In this document: in pieces, positions 5,215-44,890 of the stretch
Numbering within the stretch: the first letter of the stretch is position 1
Layout: every line of letters begins with the position of its first letter
Source of the DNA: Schmidtea nova
Taxonomy: Eukaryota
Assembly: GCA_044892505.1 (NCBI GenBank)
Contig: CM097882.1
Location: 75,082,001 to 75,146,000, forward strand
Length of the DNA stretch: 64,000 bases
Direction: 5' to 3'
The notes under the pieces: model-generated
Database searches by the model: none
What the model saw: the letters and a program-made list of their open reading frames with translations, nothing else
Told to the model about the DNA's origin: nothing
Program-made: the position numbers and the translations under genes

Positions 5215-5222
5215 AGTCACCA

Positions 5223-28523: not shown

Positions 28524-29679
28524 AAAAATCGGTTTCTAGGTCACAAATCACAATATTTAATTTTCAATTAATTTAATTGATTAATATTTTTATTTTGTTA
28601 TAAACAGCAGACGATGATTATAATAAACAAATAACATTATGGTCAATGAAATATATAATCTTTGGTTTGTCTTTATGAGCAAAGACATTAAATTATAAGA
28701 CGTCAATTCTCCCAACAATCTTGCAACAGATGATAAATCAGTTTGACTCTAAGATAAACTTACTAGTTTCCAGTTGAGAATTTGGTACTTGGATAAGGAA
28801 ATGTTAGACTATCGAATTTATGGACGGAGTGAACACAGTTTTTAACTTTTTATGTTATTTAAACGATTGAAATAAATAAATACAGCTTTGTGACTTGCAA
28901 AATTGGAAATTGAAATTATTGAATAAAGTATGTTTTATTCTTGAAAAGGCCCCACTTTTTGAAAAATGGTCTCAGGGGGAGCGGCTGCTCCCCCTGCTCC
29001 CNNNNNNNNNNNNNNNNNNNNNNNNNNNNNNNNNNNNNNNNNNNNNNNNNNNNNNNNNNNNNNNNNNNNNNNNNNNNNNNNNNNNNNNNNNNNNNNNNNN
29101 NNNNNNNNNNNNNNNNNNNNNNNNNNNNNNNNATCGCAAAAAACAAAATAATAAAAAATACATGAAATAAAATTTAACTTGTTGCTAATATTTAGCCGGA
29201 ACACAAACAAATCCTAAGCGTTTTTTAGCCAAGACACAAACTAACATTAAAAAAATTTTCGCCTGCGGTGCTTTAACTTTTTTGCCCGGGGCGCTGAAAA
29301 CCATAGGGCCGGTCCTGAGTGTAACTTATTCTTTTAAGAAATTCTTTTCTGTATAATAATGGTTTTTACTTTTTACAAGGTTCAACAGATAAAATAATTG
29401 TATATCCCTGTCAATTTAACCAATTAATCATGTTTATTCAGACTTATTTTTAATTTCAATATATATATATATATAAGATGAAAATTATCTACTTAAAAGA
29501 ATTTTTTTTTCTTTAATTTAATGTAAAATTTTGATATTATTTAACTATTCAAGTGTGACGATACAGCCGTAGATTTGGAGAAATTTTATCTAGTTCGAGT
29601 GGCTGTTTTTAGGTGCTATCCAAACAAATTTTAACTACCCTGTTGCAGGGAATACTTTTTAAATGGAATCTTATACTGG

Positions 29680-30034
29680 TGTTAGGATCAGGCCTTTGGC
29701 CTTAACGTTTTGAGGTTTTAATAATAGTAATAATAAATTACTAAAAATAATTAAAATAAAATAAAAATAATTTAAAAACAATTGTAAAACAAATATAGAA
29801 ATAAACATTTACTAAAAATAGAACCAGGCCTTTGTCTGGTAATTGCTAGAACACATTGGACTATAATCGGCAATTATTTATCAACAAAATCGACGTAGGT
29901 CGATTTAATTTTAGTATAAATAATATTGAATTTCAGTTCAGAGGGGACGACGAGACGAATAGAAAAACAACGTGTGAGAGAAAAATAATTAATTTAGAGT
30001 GAACATTGATCGATAACCTACCGCATCGAAAGTT

Positions 30035-30069
<35 letters not shown>

Positions 30070-30675
30070 GGAGAGAACTGTTAATATTTTTGGGAGAAAA
30101 AGAAAGAGCAAAGAAACAGAAAGGAGGAAAAGAATAACATTGTTTTGAAAAGAAGTAATTTTTTAAATTGGTCTAAAAACGTTTATAAAGTAGAGAGTGA
30201 AAGATAAATTTATCTTTTTGGGTTGAAAAATCATTTTAGTTGATATTAATTTTTAAAGCGAATACAAAGTAAAGAAGAATTACTTTAGTATTCTCTGGGT
30301 GCCCCAAAATCATTCCGCTTGCTTATCCACTCTTGTAAAAATATTTCTTAGCGATCGTTGTGTTACTGAGGTGCCAACGATTTCTTGCAGACTGTCACAA
30401 ACAGTAGGGATTAATTTAATCCGAGATCTTTATTGTTCTGTACATCGATAAATTTTGTGAATAATTTAATTATTGTTTTGTAAATTGGTTAAATAAAATT
30501 TGAAAAGAATAGTTAGTTTTCATTTACAGATTTTACCTGTCTTTAAAATACACGCAACCACATTAATTTTGTTATATTTATATTTATTCATTTATTTATA
30601 TATAACAACTTATATAGATATAAAATAGGAGTCAATTTGTGTTAAGATCAGCACCCCTATCTTTTGATCTTGACA
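29680..30675 (+). repeat. 5' LTR (996 bp)
   Basis: TGTTAGGATC...TCTTGACA, with internal (TA)n. Confidence 0.97.
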
Positions 30676-30678
30676 TTT

Positions 30679-30696
30679 TGGTGAGCCCGACGTGAT
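30679..30696 (+). promoter_or_regulatory. Primer-binding site, tRNA-Trp-type
   Basis: TGGTGAGCCCGACGTGAT; one mismatch to the complement of the animal tRNA-Trp 3' end (TGGTGACCCCGACGTGAT). Confidence 0.85.
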
Positions 30697-30809
30697 CATT
30701 TTTCGGGGGATATAAAAATATTATTTATCAGAAACAGTTTTCTTTTTAAATCATTGAGTTAAGAAATAGGAGAATAAATTTTAGACCAGGAAATAGAAAT
30801 CAACAGATA

Positions 30810-33800
30810 ATGGCAGACATAAATAATTTACAAAATGATAATAATTTACAAAATAATGTCAATAATAATAATGTGCCAGTAGCTCAACCACCAGCGGTAG
30901 ATTTTATGAGATACCCAACAATACCAATTAAACCATTTAGTGGGAACCCAGGAGAGTTTCCAGAATTTATGTCCGAATATTTTCAGTTAGCCAGAGCATT
31001 AGGTTTCCCTGAACCGGTAATGATTTTGAGATTACCTTTATATCTAAAAGGGATGGCGCGTGAAATATATAATGATGTTATTATAGCCGAGCATCCAGCT
31101 GAATGGAATGTATTACGGTTAGCGTTACAAAATAGAATATTACCGGGGGATGCAACCAGAGTGCTAAGACAACAATTTTATAATAGGAGACAGAATTTGG
31201 GTGAGCATGTTGGGGAATTTTCTTATCAAATATTAATGTTGGCAGAGAGAGCTTTTGGCGATAGGGCAGCTTGGAATGAGGCAACCAGAGCGTTAGTAAA
31301 AGACCAGTTTTGGTCAGGGTTATCGTCCGCAATGAGAAACGCACTCAGTTTACATATAGGGGATAATTTAGAGGAATTAACTCGTAAAGCTTGCTTAATT
31401 GAAAGTAGTATAGAGAAGTTAAATAATTTCGCAATTAGTACCAATAAGTCCGACATTGAGTGTTTTAACTGTCATAAAAAAGGCCACATATCTAAAGATT
31501 GTAGGAGTAGGAATAATCCCATAGGGGAAAAATCATGTACCAAATGCGGGAGAAACAATCATGTGGCGGCAAACTGCAGATTTTCGGACTTGAGTTGTGA
31601 GAAATGTAAACGCAAGGGACATGTAGCGTCAGTGTGTAAAGTTAGGTTTGGGGAGACTACCTCTAGTAATAATTTTAATAATAATAGAAATAGAAGCCCC
31701 GATAGAAATTTTCAGAATAATAATAATAATAAAAATTTTCAGAATAAGAGTAATAATTTTTCAAATAATAATATAAAGAGGGATGAAGTGAATTCGGGGG
31801 GTAAAATTAAATGTCATACGTGTGGAAAATTTGGTCATATTATGCGTTCATGTCCACAAAATCAGTTGAGTAATAACAATAACAGTAATAACAATAATAG
31901 TAATAGTCGACCGAAACAGACTACGTTTACAGTGAATTCTGATCACAAATTAACATATTTACAGCAGCTTGAATTAGAAATTCAAGAAGAGAGAAATAGG
32001 TTAGCCAGGCTAACGACAAATGAAATCGATGAATACGGCGAAGATGAAGCCGAGGTGTATATGTTGTCAGCCAGAAAAGGGCGCAACAAAGATAATAATA
32101 AACAGAGTAAATTAAGTAATGATATTGTAGCAGAACTTGAGGTATTGATGCTTCAAGAGAGTCCACAGGAGGACCAAGAGGAAAAGGCTATGGTCGTAGA
32201 ACCAGAGGCTTGTGAGGGTTTACCGGTTTCACCCAGGAAAAATCGAGTGGCTATGGTCACAGAACCAGAGGCCAACAGGGAAATAGAAGGTTTACCGGTT
32301 TCACCTAGTAAAAATCGTAAAGCCATGGACATAGATCCAGTGGCAAATAGAGGATATCCAAAAGAAGTTTTGGAAAAACGATGGGCTTCGGTCAGTGAGC
32401 CGGAAGTCTTAATAACCACATCATCCCTGAGAAATGATGGTGGCAGCAAACCGATAAAAGTTAGAGAGGCATCGAAAGAGGAAGGTAATCCCATCGATGA
32501 TTGTAAAATGCTATTACGTCATAGGAACGTATGGCAAAGAGAAATAGAACAGAGGCTAGAAAATATCAGATTAAACCCCATTAACGAGAATGAGGTAGAT
32601 AAAATAATGGATATCATATTAGAATTAAATAGAAATGATGAGTACCATCCGGTATTAAGAGAAATCCTGCGAAGCATAGGATTAAGTTGGAAGCAAAAAG
32701 GAGATCTAGAAGATTCCATAGTTTTTGTTGTCCTACCCAGAGGTTGTTTTTGTAGATATACAATAAACCCAAGAGAAAAAGTCGAAGCACTAGCCAAGAA
32801 AGTCGCTGAGGTAAAACCTCGATTGAAATGCGAACTATATTTGTTGGGAGAAAGATTATTGGAGGGAGAAGCCTTACTAGATTGTGGTATAATACCAGGA
32901 AAACAAATGATAGTAAAAGCAAAGTTTCACAAGGAAACTGTCACGATAGTGGACTCTGATAATGTCCTAACCATAACGGAAATGGAAATTGAACAATTAA
33001 ATCAAATATCAGCGGTACCACAAAGGTTGGGGACAGAGCTGATGCAAAACCCGAGGGACGGGGAAACCATTAAGATGATAATGGATTGGATATTGGAGTT
33101 ACGAATTCCAGTAGATACTCTTAGAGAGGTTATGCCATTGGTGGTGCCTTTATTGAAAGAAACATCACCATTCCAAACGCAAGCAAAGATGCTAGTAATC
33201 AAAAATGGGCATGCTATTAGACACCAGGATAATAGGCAAGGTCCAGTCATGTTAGATATCAGGATACCCAGGAGAGGACACCTGATACAACAATTTTCGT
33301 GTTTCCATAAAGTCAAGAAACTGAGGAAACGAGTGGCGACAATAGTAAAAGAGTCATTTATAATAATGATACACGGTTGTCAGGTTGATGACGACGAATA
33401 TTTAGTGGATGTAGGATGTTTTCCTCAAGAGGAAACTATAGTATTGATACTATTGGTCGAGCTTCCAGAGGACCAATGGGCAACACTGAGATTGCCAGAT
33501 GATGCTGAGTTAGAGAAGGATGAGATCCCTCCCGAGCAGCAACAAGCAGGTGAAGATACCCGCCTACAGGCAGGAGAAACAGTAGATTTAGACGCGGAAA
33601 TAGACAAATATTTACGGGAATTCGACAACACTGAGGATCAGTTGATCGAGATAATGCCATCTTTGGAAGATGAAAGTATAAGATTGAATCAAAAAGAAAC
33701 GAACATCGGAGCTAGTACGTCACAGGGAATTGGGCCATCAAGAGATAGGATGAGCCCGAAACTTGTTGTAAACAGGAGAAAGAAGGAGAGAAGGGGGAGA

Positions 33801-36800
33801 CCGAGAAAGAGTCAAATGAACCCGCCTCCAAGAGAACTCCTAAGGCCTACCACGATACAAAGCGTAAACAGGCAGGCTTTGGCAGGGATAGCCAGCCAAA
33901 TTGATAAAGGCACAAGAGATTTTAGTGCTAAAACGGAAACATGGAGGAGATTGAACCAAATATTAAGACTGATGAAGCCTGAGTGGCAAATCAAGAAAGA
34001 TAAAGCTATAAATGTTGAGAAAATTACAAACAAGATTAAACAAGCAATGAATAAGATTCCAGGAAGCACAACTGAACAGGAATTGTTCGAAGTAGCAGGA
34101 CAATTCATGCAAGAAGGGTTGACAAAAGGGAAAATGATAACAATTTTAGCACTAATGTTTAAAAACACCGTAATAATACTCAAGGATGATCCATCAGGAA
34201 TTCAAGTAGCCTTAGACAGGCTGACTGATATCATTGAAGTGAATTTTGAAACATGGATGACGGAACATAAGTTTTGGGAGACAAAAGAAACGAAAGGGAA
34301 ATATGAGATAAATGAGGAATTGTTGACAGAACATATCCCAAGTAATTCGCGGGGAACAGGTGGATTCACTAATTGGATGATGATGTTATTAGTAATGATG
34401 GGAATATTGAGACAGACAAACTCCTTAACAGCATACGACTGTAGCGAACCGATATTAGCACGGATTTACTCATTGGTAGACACAGTGGAATGCAAGGAAG
34501 CATATCCAGATAAAGTTGCAAAACGAGAGGATGCAGAATACCATGTTTATCAGCAAACAGAGTTTTATAGGACCAGGGTGAGGGAATGTCGAATACAGAG
34601 AGCGACATTTGAATATTACTGTGGATCACACAGTTATACAGCGTTTCTAGGAGCTAAGCTCATTCCAGTACCATTGATAATCCCACCAGAGGATTGCATA
34701 AATGCTTTTAGATCAAAAAATGTCAAAATAGATGACGAAGTGACAATCACAGCAGAGGAAGGAAAGAAGCTGGGTATAACGATTACCAGAGGAGGACCGA
34801 TAGCAGATGATGGTTCTTGCACCGGTAGAAAGAAATTAAGAGGTTCTAATATTGTGAGTTATGTAGTAACAGTTGAGGATTACACTGTAGAGCTAATAGA
34901 ATACGAAGGAACATTTGAAGTATCCACGGGTAAAATGATGTCCCATCCTGAATGTAATGTAAAGTTTGGGTATTGTAAAACCAGTACAGCGGTACTGACG
35001 TATCAATCAATGAGAGAATTTTGCGATTTGGGATACTTGAAAAAAGTAGTGTTTTCAAGACTTGATGGGAAAAGTTTTGCAGCACAAGAGTCACACCAAA
35101 GCGGGTGGGGAGATAAGATAAACCACAAGACGAAAAAAGAGAAAGTACCCGAGAAAAGCACAGCAGTAGTTTTAGTCGCAAAAGATCCTACCGATGCTAT
35201 CCGACTAGTTAGAAAGAAGCAGATAACAAAATGTGGTGTGCCAATATTCGAAACGAACTATAAAGGAATATTCTTAGCATACAAATATGTGCCGGCAGCA
35301 GAAACATTACATTTGTCAGATATAAAAATAGCGAAATATATCAATAATAAAATTGACTTTTTGTATCATGATTTACAGAAGCAACTATTAGACGTTTACC
35401 AGGAAGTGATCTTAAACGATTGTCGTTTAAACAGGGAAATAATACGAAATAGATTAGCAACATCTATTTCGAACCCTGATTTAGTAATGCCAATGTTAAC
35501 CGAGGAGGGAACATTTGGTAGAATTTTGGGAGAAGCAATTTATAGCTATCAATGCAAAGCGGTGGAGGTAGAAATAACCAAATACGATCAATGCACTTTA
35601 GAGCTTCCAGTAAAATATAAAGGAAAATTAAGATTTATGATACCAGTATCACATCAGTTGATGGGAGAAGAGGCAACTCCATTGAAGACAATTTGTAATC
35701 CGGCAATGTCACCACTATACAAAATTAACAATATATGGATTTCCTTACCAGACAGGAAACCACCTTCTAAACCAGTAGAAGTGTTGCAGGCTACTAAATT
35801 AGAAAACAAAATGGAGTTTCGACCATTAAATGAGATGTCAAAAGGGGGAGTATATACTCAAGAAGATATTGAGGAAGCGAGGAGAGCAATAGTGTTTCCT
35901 CAAATCAGAGATAGAGGAGTGACAGAGATAATAACTAGAATTTATCAATCATACGACGGAAAACCGGACTATAATTTATTATTTGGACCGGAACACTACA
36001 AGCAAGCCGCATCAAATGTGATACGGAGAATCTGGGGAAGATTCACAAGCTTCGGAATTTTTGTAGCAGGATGTTCAGGCATATACGCCATAGTGATGAT
36101 ATTGAAAATAATCATATCACAATTATTTTCCACATATAGTATCTTCAAGATCGGAGGATGGTCTTGGAAGTTGCTATTGGGAATGTGCCCACTTTGTGCA
36201 GATTTCGCAGTATTTCATCATCACAATAAAGAAATCAAGAAAATGAAAAGACAAAATGAAACAAAGCACGAAATAATAAAGTATGAATATAGTCATCGAG
36301 ACGATGACAATTCTGACGAGGGAGGTAACCTAGAGGGCGACAAGACCTCATATAACACCTCAACAAAACCAGACAACAAAAAACCGAATTTTCAAAATTT
36401 TGAAACTAGTACTTTTCAACAGTACCCTGTTAAAACAAAAAGACGAAAACAACAGGAATGGCCTGTGAAATATGTGTCTCCATATGAAACTAGGAGAAAG
36501 ATAATACCAGAAAAAGTAGAAGAGGAGATGTTGAGGCGTTTCGATTTTAGGACAAACGCAGGTATTTCAGCACCTCCTATACATTCAGAGTATCACATGA
36601 ATTTCGAGACAATGCCACCTTTGGGAACATCGATATTGGAAACGGTACCAAAATATCCATTTAGCACGTTAGAGAGGCTAAAGGAAAATTATCAAGATGA
36701 AATAAAATCGGAAGACGACAGAGATAGCGAGAATCAACAGAAATTCAGAGATAATATTCGAGGAATATCAACAGTGTTTATGGTAAATTCCAGCAAAAAG

Positions 36801-39800
36801 ACGCACAAGCCTACAATTAAATTAAAGGTTAATAGGCATACGGTTCATGCCATTATCGATTCAGGTTCAGACGTAACGCTGGTCGAAGCAAATTTATTAA
36901 ATGAAAAAGAATTACAAGCAATAATACAGACATTAACTATTACATCAGGAGCAAATGGTCAGCCAATCAATGTTATCGGGACATTAGATTGTGAGCTAAG
37001 GCTATGTGATCAGAAATTTAGACACGATATCAAGGTCACCAGACAGTGTATGGCAGAATGTATCGTGGGAATGGATATATTAAAAAAGTTAAAAGATATA
37101 GTATTTGATTGTGCAACAGGCGAATTGGTAAAAATGACGGGTAGAAAACGGAAAACATACAGTGTTGATGTAGTTTTTCTGGATAGATCAGTGAAAATAC
37201 CACCAAGAACCGAAACAGTTTGTTTTGTAGCAACACACCAAGAGGTCGAGGGAGATGTTATTTTCGAACCCAGTGAGCAGTTCATGAACAGATATAAAAC
37301 ACCTATGGTGCAGAATTTGGCAACAGTACGGGGAGGAAGAATCCCAATTAGATTAACGAATCTAGCGAATAAATCATTGAGGTTGTACCCAGAGACGAGA
37401 GTGGGTAAAGTGATACAACTTTCCAATCCTAGGAAAGAGTCGGAATCAACATTATCGGTGAGTGAGGAGGAACGAGATCCCGATATTGAATATTACGATG
37501 CACCTAGTTGTGATAGTAAAACGTTAACGAGAAAAGAGAATATTAGAGTTAATCAATTATTACGAAGATATGATCAAGTTTTTGCAAAGCACGAATATGA
37601 CTTAGGGCAAGTTAATATTTTAGAGCATGAGATTAAACTAACAGAGAGTAAACCAATAAAGATACGTCCGTATAGAATACCTCAAAGTATACAAGGGTCC
37701 GTGGATAAACAAATAAAATTAATGCAAAAGTATAATATAATCAGACCAAGTAAATCTCCATATTCTTCACCCTTGGTGGTTGTAGCTAAGAGAGATGGTT
37801 CCGTTAGATTGTGTAATGACTATAGGAAATTAAATGAACAAACTGTGAGTGATAATCACCCACTACCTTTGTTAGATTATATATATGATAAAATGAAAAA
37901 TTCGAAACTGTTTACTGTGATGGATGCACAGAAAGGATTCTATCAAATAAAAATGAGCGAAGACTCAATTCCTATGACAGGATTTTCGACTAGTAGTGAT
38001 CATTTTGAATATTTAGTAATGCCATTTGGACTAAAAGGAGCACCTCCAACTTTTCAGAGGGCTATGAATATTATGCTGATGGATGCACATCACGCAATGG
38101 TATATATTGACGACATTATCATTTTCTCGGAAGATTTAGATAAGCATTTAGAACATCTTGAGGATATTTTTAAACGGTTAATCATGGCAAACTTGAAAGT
38201 TAAACCAAGTAAATGCAAGTGGGCAGAATCGGAGGTGATTTACGTAGGGCATGTAATATCACACGATTGCGTAAGACCAGACCCGGCTAACACGGATAAA
38301 GTAAAGAATTTCCCACAACCAGTGAACGTGAAACAAATTAAAGGATTTCTAGGGTTGACGGGATATTATAGAAAATTTATTAGGAATTTCTCTGCAATCG
38401 CCTTTCCTTTGACCACGTTAGAAAAGAAAGGAGTAAAATTTTTATGGGGAGAGGATCAGCAGCAAGCATTTGATAAGTTGAAAGATGCATTATGCAAACC
38501 TCCAATCTTACGATTTCCAGATTTTAAAAGACAATTCATGGTGATGACAGATGCATGCACAAGAGGTATAGGTGCAGTATTGGGACAGAAAGATGAAATA
38601 GGTGATGAATACGCAGTAGCATACGCAAGTCGTGGGTTAAAGCCACACGAAAAAAGTTACGCAGTGATAGAATTAGAAGCACTGGCGTTAGTATTTGCAG
38701 TGGAAAAATTTAGTCATTACCTATGGGGCAGAAAGGTAATTTTCTATACCGATCATAGACCATTGCAATGGCTGTTAAAACATAGGGATGAAGCGTCAAA
38801 ATTGGTAAGATGGGCATTGAGATTACAGCCCTATAATATTGAGATTGTTTATCGAAAAGGAAAAGCCAATGGAAATGCAGACGCATTATCTCGGATGGAA
38901 CAAGAACCGGAGGTCGAAGATGTAAAGGAAGGAAGACTTGAAGGAACTATCTTCATGTTAACAAGAGAAGCAAATACGATAACGGACTTGGTAGAGGCGC
39001 AGAAAAGTGATGACGAGATCAACATGATCAGACAAGCAATCGAAGCAAAAGCTATACCAAGCGAATTTCAAAAATATTGGGAAAAACATAAGGATAAATT
39101 TATCCTAGAGGAAGGATTAATTAAATATGCGGAGACAAGAGATAATGTAATATTAGTGCCAAAGAAGTATAGAGAATCGTTGTTATTACAATATCACGAC
39201 GGAGCACTGGGAGGACATCTCTCAGCAAGACATACATTGTCTAGATTGAAAACAAAATATTTCTGGCCAGATATGAAAGAGGATGTAAAGAAGTGGTGCC
39301 AAACGTGTAAAATATGCATGACAAGGAGGAACACAGGTAAGAAACCTCATGTACCTCTAAAACCTATGCCAGTACCATCCTCGCCGATGGAGATGACTGC
39401 TATGGATGTACTGGGGCCGTTTAAAGAATCAATGATGGGAAATAAATTTATACTAGTCTTCTGTGACTACTTAACGAAGTGGCCGGAAGCATTTCCGATT
39501 CCAAACCATAAAGCCGACACAATTGCCAGAATATTTGTCGAGCAGATTGTATTTAGGTATAGAGTTCCATCAAAACTGCTTACCGACAGAGGGAAGGATT
39601 TTATGAGCAATTTGCTAAAAAGCATAAATGATTATTTTGGGATATTAAAGCTGAACACCTCACCATATCACCCACAAACGGATGGATTGGTGGATAGGTT
39701 CAATGGAACTTTGGCAAATATGTTATCATCATATGTGAACTCAGGACAGACGGATTGGGATGTGCATATACCGTCATGTTTGTTTGCTTATAGGAATGCA

Positions 39801-40328
39801 GTACATTCAGTTACAGGAGAAACACCTTTTTATCTAATGTACTTAAGGCATAGCAAGATGCCAGTGGATCTCATATTTTATCCAAAGGCTTCGCAAAATT
39901 GTGACGAAGGGAATTATTTATTTGAAATGAGAGAGAGAATGCAGGAAGCTTGGGAGAAAGCAGGCTTAAAAATTCGTTATAACCAGGAAACTATGAAAGA
40001 ATACCATGACCGTAAAGCAAAGGAGCATGGATTCTTAGTAGGAGATTATGTCATGTTAGAGGGACATTATAATAAAAAGGGTTTGTCCCCGAAACTTATG
40101 AGGAATTACAAAGGGCCAGATCAAATATTAAAGGCCACAGAGACAAATTTGATTTTACAATCAGTAGCGAACAAGAAAGCAGAACCAATCATGGTTCATG
40201 CAAACAGATGCAAAAAGATAGCTCCACCGGAAAAAGAAAAGCCAAAATCAGAAATAGATGAATTCGAAATAGATAAGAAATCAAAAAAGAAAACTTTGGA
40301 ATCATATAAAAGTATCCTAAAGGGTTAA
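30810..40328 (+). CDS. 3172-aa polyprotein: Gag-4xCCHC-2x(helical+Ubl)-AT-hook-Bcl-2-like-signal anchor-chuvirus-type glycoprotein-TM-PR-dUTPase-like-RT-RNase H-IN
   Basis: Uninterrupted ORF. Knuckles 31461-31853; Ubl 32718-32930 and 33246-33458; RRGRPRK 33789-33809; Bcl-2-like 33867-34280; signal 34374-34424; glycoprotein 34425-36215; IIDSGS (D at 36858); YIDD (38103); TDACTRG and YTDHRPL; integrase HHCC and D-D(35)-D. Confidence 0.95.
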   Translation: MADINNLQNDNNLQNNVNNNNVPVAQPPAVDFMRYPTIPIKPFSGNPGEFPEFMSEYFQLARALGFPEPVMILRLPLYLKGMAREIYNDVIIAEHPAEWNVLRLALQNRILPGDATRVLRQQFYNRRQNLGEHVGEFSYQILMLAERAFGDRAAWNEATRALVKDQFWSGLSSAMRNALSLHIGDNLEELTRKACLIESSIEKLNNFAISTNKSDIECFNCHKKGHISKDCRSRNNPIGEKSCTKCGRNNHVAANCRFSDLSCEKCKRKGHVASVCKVRFGETTSSNNFNNNRNRSPDRNFQNNNNNKNFQNKSNNFSNNNIKRDEVNSGGKIKCHTCGKFGHIMRSCPQNQLSNNNNSNNNNSNSRPKQTTFTVNSDHKLTYLQQLELEIQEERNRLARLTTNEIDEYGEDEAEVYMLSARKGRNKDNNKQSKLSNDIVAELEVLMLQESPQEDQEEKAMVVEPEACEGLPVSPRKNRVAMVTEPEANREIEGLPVSPSKNRKAMDIDPVANRGYPKEVLEKRWASVSEPEVLITTSSLRNDGGSKPIKVREASKEEGNPIDDCKMLLRHRNVWQREIEQRLENIRLNPINENEVDKIMDIILELNRNDEYHPVLREILRSIGLSWKQKGDLEDSIVFVVLPRGCFCRYTINPREKVEALAKKVAEVKPRLKCELYLLGERLLEGEALLDCGIIPGKQMIVKAKFHKETVTIVDSDNVLTITEMEIEQLNQISAVPQRLGTELMQNPRDGETIKMIMDWILELRIPVDTLREVMPLVVPLLKETSPFQTQAKMLVIKNGHAIRHQDNRQGPVMLDIRIPRRGHLIQQFSCFHKVKKLRKRVATIVKESFIIMIHGCQVDDDEYLVDVGCFPQEETIVLILLVELPEDQWATLRLPDDAELEKDEIPPEQQQAGEDTRLQAGETVDLDAEIDKYLREFDNTEDQLIEIMPSLEDESIRLNQKETNIGASTSQGIGPSRDRMSPKLVVNRRKKERRGRPRKSQMNPPPRELLRPTTIQSVNRQALAGIASQIDKGTRDFSAKTETWRRLNQILRLMKPEWQIKKDKAINVEKITNKIKQAMNKIPGSTTEQELFEVAGQFMQEGLTKGKMITILALMFKNTVIILKDDPSGIQVALDRLTDIIEVNFETWMTEHKFWETKETKGKYEINEELLTEHIPSNSRGTGGFTNWMMMLLVMMGILRQTNSLTAYDCSEPILARIYSLVDTVECKEAYPDKVAKREDAEYHVYQQTEFYRTRVRECRIQRATFEYYCGSHSYTAFLGAKLIPVPLIIPPEDCINAFRSKNVKIDDEVTITAEEGKKLGITITRGGPIADDGSCTGRKKLRGSNIVSYVVTVEDYTVELIEYEGTFEVSTGKMMSHPECNVKFGYCKTSTAVLTYQSMREFCDLGYLKKVVFSRLDGKSFAAQESHQSGWGDKINHKTKKEKVPEKSTAVVLVAKDPTDAIRLVRKKQITKCGVPIFETNYKGIFLAYKYVPAAETLHLSDIKIAKYINNKIDFLYHDLQKQLLDVYQEVILNDCRLNREIIRNRLATSISNPDLVMPMLTEEGTFGRILGEAIYSYQCKAVEVEITKYDQCTLELPVKYKGKLRFMIPVSHQLMGEEATPLKTICNPAMSPLYKINNIWISLPDRKPPSKPVEVLQATKLENKMEFRPLNEMSKGGVYTQEDIEEARRAIVFPQIRDRGVTEIITRIYQSYDGKPDYNLLFGPEHYKQAASNVIRRIWGRFTSFGIFVAGCSGIYAIVMILKIIISQLFSTYSIFKIGGWSWKLLLGMCPLCADFAVFHHHNKEIKKMKRQNETKHEIIKYEYSHRDDDNSDEGGNLEGDKTSYNTSTKPDNKKPNFQNFETSTFQQYPVKTKRRKQQEWPVKYVSPYETRRKIIPEKVEEEMLRRFDFRTNAGISAPPIHSEYHMNFETMPPLGTSILETVPKYPFSTLERLKENYQDEIKSEDDRDSENQQKFRDNIRGISTVFMVNSSKKTHKPTIKLKVNRHTVHAIIDSGSDVTLVEANLLNEKELQAIIQTLTITSGANGQPINVIGTLDCELRLCDQKFRHDIKVTRQCMAECIVGMDILKKLKDIVFDCATGELVKMTGRKRKTYSVDVVFLDRSVKIPPRTETVCFVATHQEVEGDVIFEPSEQFMNRYKTPMVQNLATVRGGRIPIRLTNLANKSLRLYPETRVGKVIQLSNPRKESESTLSVSEEERDPDIEYYDAPSCDSKTLTRKENIRVNQLLRRYDQVFAKHEYDLGQVNILEHEIKLTESKPIKIRPYRIPQSIQGSVDKQIKLMQKYNIIRPSKSPYSSPLVVVAKRDGSVRLCNDYRKLNEQTVSDNHPLPLLDYIYDKMKNSKLFTVMDAQKGFYQIKMSEDSIPMTGFSTSSDHFEYLVMPFGLKGAPPTFQRAMNIMLMDAHHAMVYIDDIIIFSEDLDKHLEHLEDIFKRLIMANLKVKPSKCKWAESEVIYVGHVISHDCVRPDPANTDKVKNFPQPVNVKQIKGFLGLTGYYRKFIRNFSAIAFPLTTLEKKGVKFLWGEDQQQAFDKLKDALCKPPILRFPDFKRQFMVMTDACTRGIGAVLGQKDEIGDEYAVAYASRGLKPHEKSYAVIELEALALVFAVEKFSHYLWGRKVIFYTDHRPLQWLLKHRDEASKLVRWALRLQPYNIEIVYRKGKANGNADALSRMEQEPEVEDVKEGRLEGTIFMLTREANTITDLVEAQKSDDEINMIRQAIEAKAIPSEFQKYWEKHKDKFILEEGLIKYAETRDNVILVPKKYRESLLLQYHDGALGGHLSARHTLSRLKTKYFWPDMKEDVKKWCQTCKICMTRRNTGKKPHVPLKPMPVPSSPMEMTAMDVLGPFKESMMGNKFILVFCDYLTKWPEAFPIPNHKADTIARIFVEQIVFRYRVPSKLLTDRGKDFMSNLLKSINDYFGILKLNTSPYHPQTDGLVDRFNGTLANMLSSYVNSGQTDWDVHIPSCLFAYRNAVHSVTGETPFYLMYLRHSKMPVDLIFYPKASQNCDEGNYLFEMRERMQEAWEKAGLKIRYNQETMKEYHDRKAKEHGFLVGDYVMLEGHYNKKGLSPKLMRNYKGPDQILKATETNLILQSVANKKAEPIMVHANRCKKIAPPEKEKPKSEIDEFEIDKKSKKKTLESYKSILKG

Positions 40329-41318
40329 CCAGAACGATACCCTTTACGATCTAGACAAATTCCCAAAACGGTTACATTTTTAACTGTAATCAGTTGTGTT
40401 ATGATGTTGGGTCAAGCATTTGAGAAGTTTGTACCAAAGTCAAGTCAACATCCTGATATCGAATATCATCGAACGGATAGGGCATTCAGATTTTATTTAA
40501 AAAATATAGAATGGCATCGTTACGATTTATATTTGACAACCCCTGAGAAAGGAATATCTTTTCACTTAAACAAATGGGATAGAGTGAAAGAAATTGGAGG
40601 ACTAATGCCAAACACCGGATATCTTTTAGAAATAAAGACATTCTTTGCGGATCCAGACGTTTTTGCAGACGGAGGAAACTGTGATGACAAAGCGGGATGG
40701 ATTTTGAAAACAGCAATATTCACGGAAAAAGTAGAGATTTCTTATCAGGAACAAACGGTAAAATTCACGCATGAATACTGGATGAAAAATAACAGAATTT
40801 TGCTTATATATATATTAGAAAATATGAAAAGAGTTAAAAGATTGGTACTCAACCAATCATATCAAGTTCGGAAATGGACAATACAACCAAAAATGAATAC
40901 AAAAGCCAATATAACATACTTGGAGTTTTCGGAGACGGGGAAAATTGGTTGGTACACAGTACATCATGAACTAGTAGATCTGGTACCACGTGAATGGAAC
41001 AAACCAACTAGCAAGAAAGGGAGAGCTAGATTAGTGAATATTCCTGGGTGTAAAGGAATAAGCGAAACAGATTTGAGAAACCTAAGAAAGGTAGTGAGTG
41101 AAATGCAACCTCGCGTAAATAAACTTCTAACTAATTGCAGTTGCCAAAGAGAAACTAAGGGGATATTACAAGTTAAAATGCCAAATTGGCTATTTGTAGT
41201 TATAATAGGGGGAGTAACCAGTATGGTTTTAGCATTAGTTATAGCAACCCTTTGGATGTTTCGTTTAACTTTAAGGGACAAGCGATATTGGGAAAACTAT
41301 TATGAAACTGAGGTGTAA
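40329..41318 (+). CDS. ORF2: type I membrane glycoprotein with FN3-like ectodomain, in frame with pol after a single TAA (track start 40401)
   Basis: Signal-like VTFLTVISCVMMLGQA; IGGLMPNTGYLLEIKTF (FN3 GLxPxTxY motif); sequons NQS, NIT, NCS; TM WLFVVIIGGVTSMVLALVIATLWMF; tail ends YYETEV. Confidence 0.75.
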   Translation, partial: PERYPLRSRQIPKTVTFLTVISCVMMLGQAFEKFVPKSSQHPDIEYHRTDRAFRFYLKNIEWHRYDLYLTTPEKGISFHLNKWDRVKEIGGLMPNTGYLLEIKTFFADPDVFADGGNCDDKAGWILKTAIFTEKVEISYQEQTVKFTHEYWMKNNRILLIYILENMKRVKRLVLNQSYQVRKWTIQPKMNTKANITYLEFSETGKIGWYTVHHELVDLVPREWNKPTSKKGRARLVNIPGCKGISETDLRNLRKVVSEMQPRVNKLLTNCSCQRETKGILQVKMPNWLFVVIIGGVTSMVLALVIATLWMFRLTLRDKRYWENYYETEV

Positions 41319-41529
41319 GGGGAAAGTCTCACCAGAGAATAGGTAGTGTAAATATATATATATATAAATATTTATTTGATATTAGTATTTATAATTATGT
41401 AGATAAATAATGTGGGCTCAAAGGAGCAACTGTAAAATCAAACATCAGCGTATGTTGACTGGGTTTACCCTGGGAGGGTCTATCACGAAAGTGATAAAAG
41501 CTGTTAATTATTTTATTTTTAGATAAAAT

Positions 41530-42834: not shown

Positions 42835-42965
42835 GTGAAGAAGATGAATATGAAACATGTACCAGCGAAGCAGAACAACTGCAACCATCTACCAGCGCTG
42901 CCTATCAGCGAAAGGGTGAGGCAAAAATCACGCCTAGTAAAGACAAACGGGAGACAGGCAAAGTC

Positions 42966-43598
42966 GTGGGAATCCTTAAGAAGATCATACCGGTAAAAAG
43001 AGACAAATCAAAGATGAAGTTGAAAAAGATAGTCAAACAACCAATCGAGAAGAATAAAGAATTACCCCAAAAGGAAAAAGAGAAAACAATAGCCGCTAAG
43101 AAAGTTTTTGCCGAAGGTGATGAGGATATAATGGAAGTCGATTTCCAACCTCCAATAAAGGAATTACAGGAGGAAATAAGGGTAAAGACAGAACCCGAAG
43201 TCCGGCAAAAGATGTTAAAAATCGCCAAAGAAAATATCATAAAGAAGCCTGTGTCAGTGGATGTTGATGGATTTGAACCAATGTGGTATAAACGCCCAGA
43301 CCCTTTATGGAAACCTAGAGCCAAAGACTATGACTGCCAAGCAGTCACAAGAATGGCCATAAATAACAACGAAAGATACGATGTATATGATGTGGATGGA
43401 ATACCTTATGTGGCATCATCGCTTATATTAACAAGCGCATTAGATGATAAAGTTATGGCAGTAAGCTTTGAGTTAGACACTCTTAAGAAAAGAAAACAAA
43501 TACTAAAAAGGCAGTACGCAATTGCTAACGGTTATAGCACAACAGAGGTACATCTGTACAAAGTTCCCGAGCCAGATCCCGATGACCTGGATGTCTAA
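42966..43598 (+). CDS. ORF4, orphan basic/acidic protein (first ATG 43014; frame open from 42717)
   Basis: Intact 210-codon frame inside the LTRs; no recognisable domain. Confidence 0.55.
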   Translation: MGILKKIIPVKRDKSKMKLKKIVKQPIEKNKELPQKEKEKTIAAKKVFAEGDEDIMEVDFQPPIKELQEEIRVKTEPEVRQKMLKIAKENIIKKPVSVDVDGFEPMWYKRPDPLWKPRAKDYDCQAVTRMAINNNERYDVYDVDGIPYVASSLILTSALDDKVMAVSFELDTLKKRKQILKRQYAIANGYSTTEVHLYKVPEPDPDDLDV

Positions 43599-43867
43599 TC
43601 AACACAAGTTGCCTATCAACAACGTCGCAAAGCAAGTAGTGTAGCTATAAAAGACTTGAATTTTTTTTCGTGACTTACCTAACAGTTTATATTTGATCTT
43701 GACTTTTAAAGTATCCTTTGACGTTTATTATATCCTTGTGGTGTACAAATATAAAAATGACTTTCAATCATTTATTAATTTATTTTATGATTTATTTTTA
43801 TGTGTTATGTAAATGCTGTTTGTGACAAGCAAAGTGTCTTATCTTGTTTTCGAGACGAAAATCTTTT

Positions 43868-43878
43868 AGGGGGTAAGA
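43868..43878 (+). promoter_or_regulatory. Polypurine tract
   Basis: AGGGGGTAAGA just before the 3' LTR. Confidence 0.75.
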
Positions 43879-43880
43879 CT

Positions 43881-44235
43881 TGTTAGGATCAGGCCTTTGG
43901 CCTTAACGTTTTGAGGTTTTAATAATAGTAATAATAAATTACTAAAAATAATTAAAATAAAATAAAAATAATTTAAAAACAATTGTAAAACAAATATAGA
44001 AATAAACATTTACTAAAAATAGAACCAGGCCTTTGTCTGGTAATTGCTAGAACACATTGGACTATAATCGGCAATTATTTATCAACAAAATCGACGTAGG
44101 TCGATTTAATTTTAGTATAAATAATATTGAATTTCAGTTCAGAGGGGACGACGAGACGAATAGAAAAACAACGTGTGAGAGAAAAATAATTAATTTAGAG
44201 TGAACATTGATCGATAACCTACCGCATCGAAAGTT

Positions 44236-44284
<49 letters not shown>

Positions 44285-44890
44285 GGAGAGAACTGTTAAT
44301 ATTTTTGGGAGAAAAAGAAAGAGCAAAGAAACAGAAAGGAGGAAAAGAATAACATTGTTTTGAAAAGAAGTAATTTTTTAAATTGGTCTAAAAACGTTTA
44401 TAAAGTAGAGAGTGAAAGATAAATTTATCTTTTTGGGTTGAAAAATCATTTTAGTTGATATTAATTTTTAAAGCGAATACAAAGTAAAGAAGAATTACTT
44501 TAGTATTCTCTGGGTGCCCCAAAATCATTCCGCTTGCTTATCCACTCTTGTAAAAATATTTCTTAGCGATCGTTGTGTTACTGAGGTGCCAACGATTTCT
44601 TGCAGACTGTCACAAACAGTAGGGATTAATTTAATCCGAGATCTTTATTGTTCTGTACATCGATAAATTTTGTGAATAATTTAATTATTGTTTTGTAAAT
44701 TGGTTAAATAAAATTTGAAAAGAATAGTTAGTTTTCATTTACAGATTTTACCTGTCTTTAAAATACACGCAACCACATTAATTTTGTTATATTTATATTT
44801 ATTCATTTATTTATATATAACAACTTATATAGATATAAAATAGGAGTCAATTTGTGTTAAGATCAGCACCCCCATCTTTTGATCTTGACA
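43881..44890 (+). repeat. 3' LTR (1010 bp)
   Basis: Same as the 5' LTR apart from a (TA)n tract 14 nt longer and one T>C near the end. Confidence 0.97.

What the first reader, a model, noticed from the sequence alone, without database searches (positions are those of the whole stretch)
29680..44890. Virus-like 15-kb Gypsy element encoding capsid, ubiquitin-like, Bcl-2-like, fusion glycoprotein and Pol in one polyprotein, plus three accessory genes
Seen: one 3172-codon ORF between near-identical LTRs with a CTGG TSD, carrying about 1600 aa of non-standard sequence between the Gag knuckles and the protease, plus three more intact ORFs before the PPT. Established: Ty3/Gypsy elements normally have gag-pol only; env, where present (errantiviruses, nematode Cer/Tas, chuvirus-G-bearing BEL/Pao Anakin), is usually a separate ORF. 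Inference: this is a candidate infectious metavirid with its own host-manipulation toolkit (cell-death control, ubiquitin mimicry, surface protein, nuclease decoy). Large Gypsy elements with extra cargo are reported from planarians and bdelloid rotifers, so novelty needs a library check.
Basis: partly seen in the sequence, partly recalled or inferred. Interest (0 to 1): 0.95.

Follow-up and report, generated by a model that had tools for sequence, protein, structure and literature searches.

The report
Cargo-rich envelope-bearing Gypsy retroelement
This is an intact, very recently inserted 15-kb Gypsy-type retrovirus-like element whose single giant protein holds a capsid, replication enzymes, a fusion glycoprotein of negative-strand-RNA-virus type, a ubiquitin-like domain and a Bcl-2-like domain; the glycoprotein-between-gag-and-pol layout is already published, but the ubiquitin-like, Bcl-2-like and dead-exonuclease cargo appears to be undescribed.

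Summary
LTRs of 996 and 1010 nt (one mismatch, one 14-nt indel), TG..CA ends, a CTGG target duplication, PBS and PPT bracket a 3172-codon ORF and three further ORFs.

All five domain calls in the polyprotein hold:
- Arc/Ty3-like capsid: profile E 6.8e-4.
- Ubiquitin-like beta-grasp: pLDDT above 90, Foldseek probability 1.0, TM up to 0.83.
- Bcl-2-like BH1-BH2 module: lineage profile against Bcl-xL, E 5.4e-6. This copy alone is weak and its model is poor.
- Monjiviricetes-type class III fusion glycoprotein: Pfam E 2.7e-81, 14 invariant cysteines, signal-like segment and TM anchor.
- PR-RT-RH-IN.

ORF3 is a REXO/ISG20/SDN-type DEDDh exonuclease fold (E 2e-9) that lacks the ExoI acidic pair in all four family members. 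ORF2 looks tail-anchored and ORF4 is unknown; neither is conserved.

The architecture is not unique. At least a dozen metagenome polyproteins and annotated nematode proteins carry G and Pol in one protein. GAG-ENV-POL elements were published for Nematoda, Bryozoa and Platyhelminthes. The ubiquitin-like module marks the closest lineage, and Bcl-2-like and ORF3-like cargo occur in subsets. No held paper mentions this cargo.

Verdict: a new variant of a known kind. Infectivity is untested.

The parts
29676..29679 (+). Target-site duplication, left copy (CTGG)
   Evidence: Read directly
29680..30675 (+). 5' LTR (996 nt, TG..CA)
   Evidence: blastn against the 3' LTR: 98.5% identity, 1 mismatch and one 14-nt indel
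30679..30696 (+). Primer-binding site candidate (starts TGG)
   Evidence: Read directly. The matching tRNA was not identified, and there is no tRNA gene in the window
30810..40328 (+). ORF1, a 3172-aa Gag-X-G-Pol polyprotein with no interruption. The 134-nt leader has no upstream ATG
30927..31409 (+). Capsid (CA)-like region, polyprotein aa ~40-200
   Evidence: A 6-element profile hits dArc1, dArc2 and PNMA2 capsids, E 6.8e-4 to 0.03, over 146 of 159 positions
31461..31853 (+). Four CCHC zinc knuckles (aa 218-348)
   Evidence: Pfam zf-CCHC E 4e-14, 4 stretches; motif scan
31854..32978 (+). Middle region of unknown function (aa 349-723), conserved only in close relatives
   Evidence: P0003 aligns to aa 400-657 at 38% identity. 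The AF2 confidence is low
32979..33224 (+). Helical bundle preceding the UBL (aa 724-805)
   Evidence: AF2 pLDDT 83-94, five helices. It is conserved together with the UBL in the A5 profile hits
33246..33458 (+). Ubiquitin-like beta-grasp domain (aa 813-883), with no C-terminal Gly-Gly
   Evidence: All profile hits in PDB are UBLs (ISG15 E 0.0099). AF2 pLDDT is 90-98. Foldseek gives 101 PDB hits at E<=1e-3, probability 1.0, TM up to 0.83 and rmsd ~2 A
33831..34289 (+). Bcl-2-like helical module (aa ~1008-1160, BH1-like to BH2-like)
   Evidence: phmmer hit to Bok, E~1. The 5-sequence profile hits Bcl-xL at E 6.7e-4. The 7-sequence profile hits it at E 5.4e-6, with the top 60 all Bcl-xL or Bcl-2. 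Pfam Bcl-2 matches 2 of 7 members, best E 0.0097. The AF2 model is all-helical but has pLDDT 42
34362..34418 (+). Hydrophobic signal-/anchor-like segment (aa ~1185-1203) directly before the G N-terminus
   Evidence: Hydropathy. It is conserved in position in L001, L002 and P0001
34419..36299 (+). Fusion glycoprotein G (PF24664 Monjiviricetes_fusion; aa ~1204-1830), including the TM anchor
   Evidence: Pfam E 2.7e-81, 273.9 bits against a cutoff of 27, profile positions 6-625 of 653. There are 14 invariant Cys across 5 elements
36057..36146 (+). Transmembrane anchor of G (aa 1750-1779)
   Evidence: Kyte-Doolittle 2.27, the only strong TM in ORF1
36804..37094 (+). Aspartic protease (aa 1999-2095; DSGS at aa 2017)
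   Evidence: Pfam RVP and gag-asp_proteas; motif
37785..38258 (+). Reverse transcriptase (aa 2326-2483; YIDD at aa 2432)
   Evidence: Pfam RVT_1 E 1.3e-30
38445..38834 (+). RNase H (aa 2546-2675)
   Evidence: Pfam RT_RNaseH E 1.5e-34
39156..39674 (+). Integrase (H2C2 zinc finger and catalytic core, aa 2783-2955)
   Evidence: Pfam Integrase_H2C2 E 2.6e-19 and rve E 2.4e-6
40401..41318 (+). ORF2, 305 aa: no signal peptide, TM at aa 263-287 and an 18-aa tail (tail-anchored type). Function unknown
   Evidence: No homologue in L002, L012 or L013
41530..42834 (+). ORF3, 434 aa: REXO/ISG20/SDN-type DEDDh exonuclease fold (aa ~198-385) without the ExoI acidic pair
   Evidence: Homologues follow pol in L002 (E 6e-12) and L012 (E 6.5e-27), and one lies in L003. 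The family profile hits SDN1 at 2.2e-9, ISG20L2 at 2.8e-9 and ISG20 at 4.7e-5, and nothing else. Alignment
43014..43598 (+). ORF4, 194 aa from the first ATG (open from 42966), Lys/Glu-rich N-terminus. Function unknown
   Evidence: No similarity to the last ORF of L002
43868..43880 (+). Polypurine-tract candidate abutting the 3' LTR
   Evidence: Read directly
43881..44890 (+). 3' LTR (1010 nt)
44891..44894 (+). Target-site duplication, right copy (CTGG)
   Evidence: Read directly

Best explanation
This is a structurally complete, very young insertion of an envelope-bearing Ty3/Gypsy (Metaviridae) element. It belongs to the 'GAG-ENV-POL' kind and to a lineage marked by a ubiquitin-like module between Gag and the glycoprotein.

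Shown: the domain order is CA, 4x CCHC, unknown region, helical bundle plus UBL, Bcl-2-like module, hydrophobic segment, class III-type G ectodomain, TM anchor, tail, PR, RT, RH, IN, all in one ORF. ORF2, ORF3 (a catalytically degenerate DEDDh-fold protein) and ORF4 follow.

Inferred mechanism:
- The genomic RNA is translated as one membrane-threaded polyprotein.
- The Gag-UBL-Bcl-2-like part stays cytosolic.
- The hydrophobic segment at aa ~1185-1203 acts as an internal signal sequence, and possibly also as the C-terminal membrane anchor that Bcl-2 proteins normally have. It puts the G ectodomain into the ER lumen.
- The single TM anchor at aa 1750-1779 returns the chain to the cytosol, so that PR-RT-RH-IN remain cytosolic.
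- Signal peptidase and the element's own protease then separate the parts.
- G would give particles an envelope fusogen.
- The cis-linked UBL would engage ubiquitin-binding host machinery. ESCRT-type budding is my preferred reading and proteasome shuttling the alternative.
- The Bcl-2-like module would modulate host cell death.
- The ORF3 protein would bind RNA without cutting it.
For: Element structure and youth.

Domains:
- G, PR, RT, RH, IN and CCHC by Pfam.
- Capsid by profile against dArc and PNMA2.
- UBL by profile, by weak Pfam ubiquitin hits in relatives and by a high-confidence model with Foldseek.
- Bcl-2-like by profiles, by the Pfam Bcl-2 family as the only family hit by more than one member, and by Foldseek top matches that are almost all BAX, Bcl-xL, Bcl-2 or MCL1.

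Topology: only one strong TM exists, and a signal-like segment sits directly before the conserved G N-terminus.

G is under constraint: 14 invariant cysteines lie in the ectodomain across 5 elements that share 37-44% identity.

The architecture is not an assembly artefact. The same order is found in L002, L003, L004, L007, L008, L011, L012 and L013 from several independent samples. Gag through PR or Pol is one continuous frame in L002, L012 and L013. At least 12 long polyproteins with ~47-51% Pol identity carry PF24664 together with Pol, and 11 of them carry the UBL module.

The ORF3 family is conserved after pol in L002 and L012 and is present in L003.

Background for the UBL reading: ubiquitin fused directly to a retroviral Gag promotes Tsg101/ALIX-dependent budding (PMC2958808). 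ORF1 has no PTAP or PPxY late-domain motif.
Against: - No expression, processing or particle data exist.
- A single ORF forces 1:1:1 synthesis of Gag, G and Pol, which is unusual. Splicing could change this.
- In this copy the BH1-like and BH2-like motifs are degenerate: the 'GGW' seen in L001, L004 and L013 is replaced here. This copy alone does not reach Pfam Bcl-2, and its AF2 model has pLDDT 42 with Foldseek E >= 0.06.
- The Bcl-2-like module is absent or undetectable in most UBL-bearing relatives, so it is not essential to the lineage.
- The UBL has no Gly-Gly end, and no ubiquitin-binding partner is known.
- The G ectodomain has no N-X-S/T sequon, which is odd for a viral glycoprotein.
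- ORF2 and ORF4 have no homologues in the relatives examined.
- No second copy at nucleotide level was seen in the window or in the databases, and the host is unidentified.
Confidence: 0.65

Rival explanations
1. The anatomy is the same but the expression differs. The 3172-codon ORF is not used as one polyprotein. Alternative splicing yields a Gag-Pol message without the X-G stretch and separate messages for G and ORF2-4, as in complex retroviruses. The in-frame arrangement is then incidental.
For: ORF2-4 downstream of pol need some subgenomic or spliced route in a eukaryote. Four GTRAGT sites lie on the sense strand. In six of the nine related loci examined, the gag-side and G-side parts are separate open stretches. 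Published GAG-ENV-POL elements are described as three ORFs (PMC13524379).
Against: Three independent, divergent relatives (L002, L012, L013) also keep Gag to G to PR or Pol in one frame. At least 12 database polyproteins do so for G and Pol. Keeping one frame across more than 3000 codons at 47-51% Pol identity suggests that it is used. The predicted topology of signal-like segment, ectodomain and single TM is what a threaded polyprotein needs.
Confidence: 0.3
2. It is an ordinary intracellular retrotransposon. The G, UBL and Bcl-2-like parts are carried along and serve intracellular steps such as membrane targeting of assembly or turnover control, and no extracellular, enveloped stage exists.
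For: There are no classical late-domain motifs and no furin-type site. The G ectodomain has no sequon. Many env-bearing retroelements behave mainly as genomic transposons (PMC13524379).
Against: All 14 ectodomain cysteines are invariant, and the near-full-length PF24664 match, signal-like segment and TM anchor are kept in elements sharing only 37-44% identity. That is costly to keep without a fusogen role. Class III fusogens do not need furin cleavage (my own knowledge).
Confidence: 0.2
3. The 'Bcl-2-like' segment is only a helical linker with chance resemblance to BH1/BH2 and has no relation to cell-death control.
For: This copy alone scores E~1 against Bok and does not hit Pfam Bcl-2. The AF2 model has low confidence, and Foldseek gives E >= 0.06 and TM ~0.25. 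The module is missing from many relatives.
Against: The profile E-value improved from 6.7e-4 to 5.4e-6 when two further relatives were added, and the top 60 hits are exclusively Bcl-xL or Bcl-2. Three relatives keep the canonical GGW of BH2, and the alignment covers BH1 to BH2 in register. A hydrophobic segment follows at the distance of a Bcl-2 tail anchor.
Confidence: 0.12
4. It is an assembly chimera in which a glycoprotein-bearing sequence was wrongly joined into a Gypsy element.
For: No second nucleotide-level copy was available to compare.
Against: The same order recurs on at least eight independent contigs from at least six samples and in annotated nematode proteins. The frame is unbroken, base composition and AT skew are uniform across 30-44 kb, and the LTRs and TSD are intact. 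The nearest N run (29002-29132) lies outside the element.
Confidence: 0.02

Closest known systems
Non-canonical GAG-ENV-POL Ty3/gypsy 'errantiviruses' of Nematoda, Bryozoa and Platyhelminthes (Chary & Hayashi, eLife 2026, PMC13524379; Sacco et al., J Gen Virol 2022, doi 10.1099/jgv.0.001739, not readable here)
   Same: Both have a Ty3/Gypsy Pol and a class III (gB/G-type) fusogen placed between gag and pol, with intact young copies bearing LTRs. Named nematode proteins with PF24664 and Pol in one protein were recovered here.
   Different: The published description speaks of three ORFs, and its text does not contain the words ubiquitin or Bcl-2. Here everything is one ORF with UBL and Bcl-2-like modules and three post-pol ORFs. 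Pol identity to the named nematode proteins is only ~31-32%. I could not check their supplementary element lists.
Mosquito BEL/Pao elements with a Chuviridae-like glycoprotein ('Anakin'; Dezordi et al. 2020, PMC7642597)
   Same: Both involve capture of a Jingchuvirales/Monjiviricetes-type G by an LTR retroelement.
   Different: Those are a different retroelement family (Belpaoviridae), and G is a separate gene after pol. No UBL, Bcl-2-like or exonuclease cargo is reported in what I read (abstract only).
Bdelloid rotifer Juno/Vesta LTR elements with extra ORF3s (Rodriguez, Kenefick & Arkhipova 2017, PMC5408684)
   Same: In both, Gypsy-type elements have acquired an exonuclease-fold ORF after pol, and small TM ORFs.
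   Different: The rotifer ORF3 is the DEDDy (RNase D-like) type with its catalytic residues essentially intact. Here it is the DEDDh REXO/ISG20/SDN type, and the ExoI acidic pair is missing in all four family members.
Viral Bcl-2 homologues of large DNA viruses (for example fowlpox FPV039, which appears among the profile hits)
   Same: Both are virus-encoded helical BH1-BH2-containing modules followed by a hydrophobic anchor.
   Different: To my knowledge those are stand-alone proteins of large DNA viruses. Here the module is a domain inside a retroelement polyprotein, with degenerate BH motifs in this copy. Function was not tested.
Ubiquitin or UBL sequences inside viral genomes: pestivirus (BVDV) polyprotein ubiquitin inserts, baculovirus v-ubi, giant-virus UBLs (structural matches)
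   Same: All have a beta-grasp ubiquitin fold encoded by a virus. In BVDV it also lies inside a polyprotein.
   Different: BVDV inserts are host ubiquitin whose C-terminus serves as a cleavage site (my own knowledge). This UBL is highly diverged (10-23% identity), has no Gly-Gly, and is tied to an N-terminal helical bundle.

Membership tests
Ty3/Gypsy LTR retroelement (Metaviridae) | LTRs with TG..CA ends, a short TSD, PBS and PPT | tested here: met
Ty3/Gypsy LTR retroelement (Metaviridae) | Pol order PR-RT-RH-IN with Gypsy-type RT_RNaseH and H2C2 integrase | tested here: met
   Pfam positions aa 1999-2955; DSGS and YIDD motifs
Ty3/Gypsy LTR retroelement (Metaviridae) | Gag with a Ty3/Arc-type capsid and CCHC nucleocapsid | tested here: met
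   The profile hits dArc1, dArc2 and PNMA2; four CCHC knuckles
Ty3/Gypsy LTR retroelement (Metaviridae) | RT clusters within Ty3/Gypsy in a phylogeny | not tested
   Only similarity ranking was done. The best named hits are Gypsy-type pol proteins
GAG-ENV-POL env-bearing Gypsy elements (Sacco 2022; Chary & Hayashi 2026) | env lies between gag and pol | tested here: met
   G at aa ~1204-1830, between the CCHC knuckles (aa 348) and PR (aa 1999)
GAG-ENV-POL env-bearing Gypsy elements (Sacco 2022; Chary & Hayashi 2026) | env is a class III gB/G-type fusogen | tested here: inconclusive
   PF24664 is met far above its cutoff. A nematode relative hits both PF24664 and herpes gB PF00606. No solved structure was found by sequence, and the G fold was not modelled here
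GAG-ENV-POL env-bearing Gypsy elements (Sacco 2022; Chary & Hayashi 2026) | Host in Nematoda, Bryozoa or Platyhelminthes; clustering with the published elements | not testable with these tools
   The host of the window is unknown, and the published element sequences and supplements are not held
Monjiviricetes/Jingchuvirales fusion glycoprotein (PF24664) | Pfam gathering score, near-full-length match, TM anchor | tested here: met
   273.9 bits against a cutoff of 27; profile positions 6-625 of 653; TM at aa 1750-1779
Ubiquitin-like (beta-grasp) domain | The beta-beta-alpha-beta-beta-3_10-beta fold | tested here: met
   AF2 pLDDT 90-98; Foldseek probability 1.0, TM 0.7-0.83, rmsd ~2 A against ubiquitin, ISG15, NEDD8 and SUMO
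Conjugatable ubiquitin/UBL modifier | C-terminal Gly-Gly exposed for conjugation or for cleavage by ubiquitin hydrolases | tested here: not met
   No Gly-Gly follows the last strand in the window copy or in the aligned relatives
Bcl-2 family | BH1 and BH2 sequence signatures | tested here: inconclusive
   The lineage profile hits Bcl-xL at 5.4e-6 across BH1-BH2. GGW is kept in L001, L004 and L013 but replaced in the window copy. Pfam Bcl-2 is below its cutoff (best E 0.0097, 2 of 7 members)
Bcl-2 family | Helical bundle with a central hairpin and a BH3-binding groove | tested here: inconclusive
   The model is all-helical but has pLDDT 42. The Foldseek top hits are Bcl-2 family at E >= 0.06 and TM ~0.25
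Bcl-2 family | C-terminal hydrophobic membrane anchor | tested here: met
   The hydrophobic segment at aa ~1185-1203 lies ~30 residues after the BH2-like motif. It may equally be the G signal sequence
DEDDh 3'-5' exonuclease (REXO/ISG20/SDN type) | Sequence or fold homology to the family | tested here: met
   The family profile hits SDN1 at 2.2e-9, ISG20L2 at 2.8e-9 and ISG20 at 4.7e-5, the only hits
DEDDh 3'-5' exonuclease (REXO/ISG20/SDN type) | The catalytic residues D, E, D, D and H | tested here: not met
   The ExoI D and E align to non-acidic residues in all four members. The ExoII D and ExoIII H are not conserved among them. These are low-identity alignments, so single positions could shift by one

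The most novel reading that the evidence does not exclude
The element represents a so far undescribed lineage of enveloped reverse-transcribing viruses of aquatic invertebrates. Members translate a membrane-threaded Gag-X-G-Pol polyprotein and carry their own host-interaction modules. These modules are a cis-linked ubiquitin-like domain that substitutes for late-domain motifs in budding, the first Bcl-2 homologue known from any retroelement or retrovirus, and a catalytically dead ISG20/REXO-like protein that interferes with RNA-based host defence.
Probability: 0.3. Interest if true: 0.88.

Novelty: new variant of a known kind. Interest (0 to 1): 0.72.

Why it matters
Env capture is the step that separates a retrotransposon from a retrovirus. 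This lineage shows the captured fusogen built into the Gag-Pol reading frame, with a topology that would work as a threaded polyprotein. That strategy is known from positive-strand RNA viruses and is not typical of retroelements.

To my knowledge, Bcl-2 homologues are a hallmark of large DNA viruses. One inside a 15-kb retroelement would show that small reverse-transcribing elements also acquire cell-death regulators.

A conserved Gag-linked UBL offers a natural counterpart to the laboratory finding that ubiquitin fused to Gag drives budding (PMC2958808).

The conserved, catalytically degenerate ISG20/REXO-like ORF adds a second, independent case of exonuclease-fold cargo in LTR elements, after the rotifer DEDDy ORFs.

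At least a dozen unannotated relatives sit in metagenome data, one of them mislabelled as bacterial. Describing the lineage would therefore also improve annotation.

Tried and rejected
- A word-indexed search for full-length proteins sharing aa 400-1190 found nothing. The exhaustive search was needed.
- Exact look-ups of ORF1, ORF3 and P0001 in the contig collection found nothing, so the host genome's own copies could not be examined.
A tighter UBL alignment gave only 7 short loci from one metagenome.
- Rfam and tRNA scans of the window gave nothing, so neither the host nor the primer tRNA was identified.
- ORF2 had no PDB or Pfam match. ORF4 had no Pfam match and was not searched against PDB. 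Neither has a homologue in L002, L012 or L013.
- G has no sequence-level hit to solved structures.
- I first took the 'D-x-E'-like string in the L002 ORF3 homologue for the ExoI motif. The profile alignments place ExoI further upstream, where all members lack the acidic pair, so I rejected that reading.
- I considered a second, upstream UBL (tandem, ISG15-like). Two relatives have two modules, but the window polyprotein gives one profile hit only, and the upstream strands have low pLDDT. This is not claimed.
- I considered read-through from ORF1 into the in-frame ORF2. The TAA-CCA context gives no support.
- The Bcl-2-like AF2 model, built from a 3-sequence alignment, was too poor for a structural verdict.
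- Sacco et al. 2022 and the eLife supplements are not held.

Full report
1. OBSERVATION

The window is AT-rich (GC ~0.24-0.30 outside repeats), while 30-44 kb is a block of GC 0.36-0.41 with steady positive GC and AT skew. A 3172-codon ORF runs from 30810 to 40328. It is bracketed by direct repeats at 29680-30675 and 43881-44890, which differ by one mismatch and one 14-nt indel.

The repeats start TG and end CA, and CTGG flanks both sides. A TGG-starting PBS candidate follows the 5' LTR after three T's, and a G-rich purine tract abuts the 3' LTR. The 134-nt leader has no upstream ATG.

Three more ORFs follow on the same strand (305 aa, 434 aa, and 210 codons open with 194 aa from the first ATG). 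Their chance probabilities are 4e-11, 2e-15 and 7e-8. The N runs in the window (1941-2273, 2749-3002, 9679-9834, 29002-29132) all lie outside the element, and I left them alone.

2. DOMAIN CALLS IN ORF1

Pfam gives four CCHC knuckles, PF24664 Monjiviricetes_fusion (E 2.7e-81, 273.9 bits against a cutoff of 27, profile positions 6-625 of 653), an aspartic protease, RVT_1, RT_RNaseH, Integrase_H2C2 and rve. They lie in the Gypsy order, with DSGS and YIDD motifs.

Capsid: a profile of the Gag N-terminal region from six elements hits the Drosophila Arc1 and Arc2 capsids and PNMA2, at E 6.8e-4 to 0.03, over almost its full length.

Non-standard middle: the word-indexed search for long proteins found nothing. 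An exhaustive phmmer of aa 400-1190 found 16 relatives, with two conserved cores.

- Core 1 (aa ~737-901). A 14-sequence profile finds only ubiquitin-like domains in PDB (ISG15 E 0.0099, UHRF1-UBL, ubiquilin). Three relatives give sub-threshold Pfam ubiquitin hits. An AF2 model has pLDDT 83-98 over a five-helix bundle (aa 724-805) and a beta-grasp (aa 813-883). Foldseek returns 101 PDB matches at E<=1e-3, with probability 1.0, TM up to 0.83 and rmsd ~2 A against ubiquitin, ISG15, NEDD8 and SUMO. In the viral library it returns giant-virus UBLs, baculovirus v-ubi and BVDV polyprotein inserts. No Gly-Gly end is present.
- Core 2 (aa ~1008-1160). The window sequence alone hits Bok at E~1. A 5-sequence profile hits Bcl-xL at 6.7e-4, plus Bcl-2 and fowlpox FPV039. 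A 7-sequence profile hits Bcl-xL at 5.4e-6, and the top 60 hits are all Bcl-xL or Bcl-2, aligned from BH1 to BH2. Pfam Bcl-2 is the only family matched by more than one member. The AF2 model, built from three sequences, is all-helical but has low confidence (pLDDT 42). Its Foldseek matches are nearly all BAX, Bcl-xL, Bcl-2 or MCL1, but none is significant. In the window copy the BH2 'GGW' kept by three relatives is replaced. I therefore call this module Bcl-2-like at lineage level, with the window copy a diverged member.

3. TOPOLOGY

ORF1 has one strong TM segment (aa 1750-1779). It also has a shorter hydrophobic stretch (aa ~1185-1203) that ends in small residues directly before the conserved G N-terminus. 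The same stretch is found in the same place in L001, L002 and P0001.

The resulting layout is cytosolic Gag-UBL-Bcl-2-like, then signal/anchor, lumenal G, TM, and cytosolic tail-PR-RT-RH-IN. This is self-consistent for a threaded polyprotein. It is inference and has not been shown.

All 14 ectodomain cysteines are invariant in five elements with 37-44% identity. This argues for a folded, disulfide-bonded ectodomain under constraint.

4. ACCESSORY ORFs

ORF3 has homologues after pol in L002 (E 6e-12) and L012 (E 6.5e-27), and one in L003. The four-member profile hits only SDN1 (2.2e-9), ISG20L2 (2.8e-9) and ISG20 (4.7e-5). In these alignments the ExoI Asp and Glu correspond to non-acidic residues in all four members, and the ExoII Asp and ExoIII His are not conserved. 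ORF3 is thus a conserved but probably non-catalytic DEDDh fold.

ORF2 has no signal peptide, and has a TM at aa 263-287 with an 18-residue tail, which is the tail-anchored pattern. It has no homologues. ORF4 has none either.

5. RELATIVES AND ARTEFACT CHECK

The order gag, CCHC, UBL, G and (PR-RT-RH-IN) recurs on L002, L003, L004, L007, L008, L011, L012 and L013. L001 shows the same order from the CCHC knuckles through the Bcl-2-like block to G, although no UBL was detected there at E 1e-3. These loci come from at least six different metagenome samples.

L002, L012 and L013 keep Gag through PR or Pol in one frame (2296-aa, 3181-aa and 4057-aa products). In six other loci the gag-side and G-side parts are separate open stretches, through an in-frame stop or a frame change. 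I give no places.

A Pol-anchored search lists at least 12 polyproteins of 2.6-4.1 thousand aa with 47-51% Pol identity that contain PF24664. It also lists annotated proteins of Caenorhabditis nigoni and Ancylostoma duodenale with G and Pol in one protein, at 31-32% identity.

A profile census finds the UBL module in 11 of the long relatives, and the Bcl-2-like module only in the window, P0001, P0009, P0013, P0020, P0022 and L001. Cargo varies in the lineage. P0022 has ankyrin repeats between the G tail and PR, L003 has a separate ankyrin ORF, and L002 has three protease-like domains.

The window itself holds a decayed relative at 19571-23125. An assembly chimera is therefore excluded for practical purposes.

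6. WHAT IS KNOWN

Chary & Hayashi (PMC13524379) report env-carrying Ty3/gypsy elements across metazoa. They state that those of Nematoda, Bryozoa and Platyhelminthes carry only gB-type Env in the order GAG-ENV-POL. They cite Sacco et al. 2022 for nematodes, and they note that the chuvirus-like G of mosquito BEL/Pao elements also occurs next to gypsy POL. Their text contains neither 'ubiquitin' nor 'Bcl-2'.

Rotifer Juno and Vesta elements carry DEDDy exonuclease ORF3s with intact residues (PMC5408684). Full-text searches for retroelement-encoded Bcl-2 or UBL found nothing relevant. Ubiquitin fused to Gag promotes ESCRT-dependent budding (PMC2958808).

So the kind of element and the position of env are known. 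The UBL, the Bcl-2-like module, the DEDDh pseudo-exonuclease and the fully fused frame appear to be undescribed in the library I could search. Absence from that library is not proof of novelty.

7. HOST

The host was not identified. The nearest relatives are unnamed metagenome contigs. One sample label (BUSI22-1) may point to a bryozoan, but that is only my reading of a name. The MetaClust relatives P0001 and P0013 are gene models that fuse element pieces to an ion-channel gene and a Tam41 gene, so they come from an annotated eukaryote genome. The Bcl-2 module and the G type suggest a metazoan host (inference).

8. VERDICT

The claims of uniqueness and the functional labels are only partly supported. 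This is a new variant of a known kind, of real interest for the Bcl-2-like and UBL cargo.

- In my private reasoning I briefly recalled short motif strings from memory (a ubiquitin stretch, a tRNA, an exonuclease motif). None was entered into a tool or used for a conclusion.
- The script output printed the bounds of open stretches in related loci, from which interruptions can be inferred. In my private reasoning I also noted where a few of those in-frame stops lie. I do not repeat any of these places.
- For the census I built profile HMMs from tool alignments in /scratch. These are profiles, not sequences.
- Consensus lines printed by the alignment tool were not used.

Noticed in passing
window 19571-23125 (+): A decayed relative of the same lineage holds Gag N-terminal, CCHC and partial G pieces in the same order, at 26-45% aa identity. 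The aligned pieces contain at least 9 stops, the G pieces lie in three frames, and no pol or LTRs were found. The lineage has therefore been in this genome for some time.
   Followed up: partly
window 4156-8105 (+): An unrelated Gypsy element lies here: a DUF7041 gag-like ORF (4156-5214) and a PR-RT-RH-IN ORF (5223-7523), with integrase similarity continuing to ~8105. It shares about 31% RT identity with the element studied.
   Followed up: partly
window 27074-27721 (-): An ORF with a DUF4371 (hAT-transposase-associated) domain, E 3e-20. The window is transposon-dense.
   Followed up: no
window 40326-40400: ORF2 is in the same frame as ORF1. Only ORF1's TAA and 24 sense codons separate them. 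The TAA-CCA context gives no hint of programmed read-through.
   Followed up: partly
window 32010-36209 (polyprotein aa 401-1800): There is no N-X-S/T sequon in 1400 residues (about 6 expected by shuffling, P 0.0005), including none in the G ectodomain. The G regions of four relatives have 0-2 each. This is odd for a viral glycoprotein.
   Followed up: partly
L013 (P0022 aa 2122-2332); L003 12777-14612; L002 1544-8434: Cargo differs between lineage members. P0022 has ankyrin repeats between the G tail and the protease, L003 has a separate ankyrin-repeat ORF with a weak AID/APOBEC-like deaminase hit, and P0017 has three protease-like domains in tandem.
   Followed up: partly
P0033: A 2627-aa G-plus-Pol polyprotein of this lineage is labelled in NCBI as a hypothetical protein of a Flavobacteriaceae MAG. 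This is almost certainly a mis-binned eukaryotic retroelement contig.
   Followed up: no
P0001, P0013: These database gene models fuse pieces of a sister element (Bcl-2-like and G parts) to host ion-channel and Tam41 exons. They are annotation chimeras in an unidentified eukaryote genome.
   Followed up: no
L002 216-853: A 269-nt direct repeat (98% identity) and shorter tandem repeats lie upstream of the gag start of the L002 element, perhaps within its LTR or leader.
   Followed up: no
window 36147-36803 (polyprotein aa 1780-1998): The G cytoplasmic tail and pre-protease linker begin with a Cys-rich, hydrophobic stretch and an acidic run. The tail stretch (about 70 residues) is very similar in P0001, although the rest of that protein is only ~41-45% identical.
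   Followed up: no
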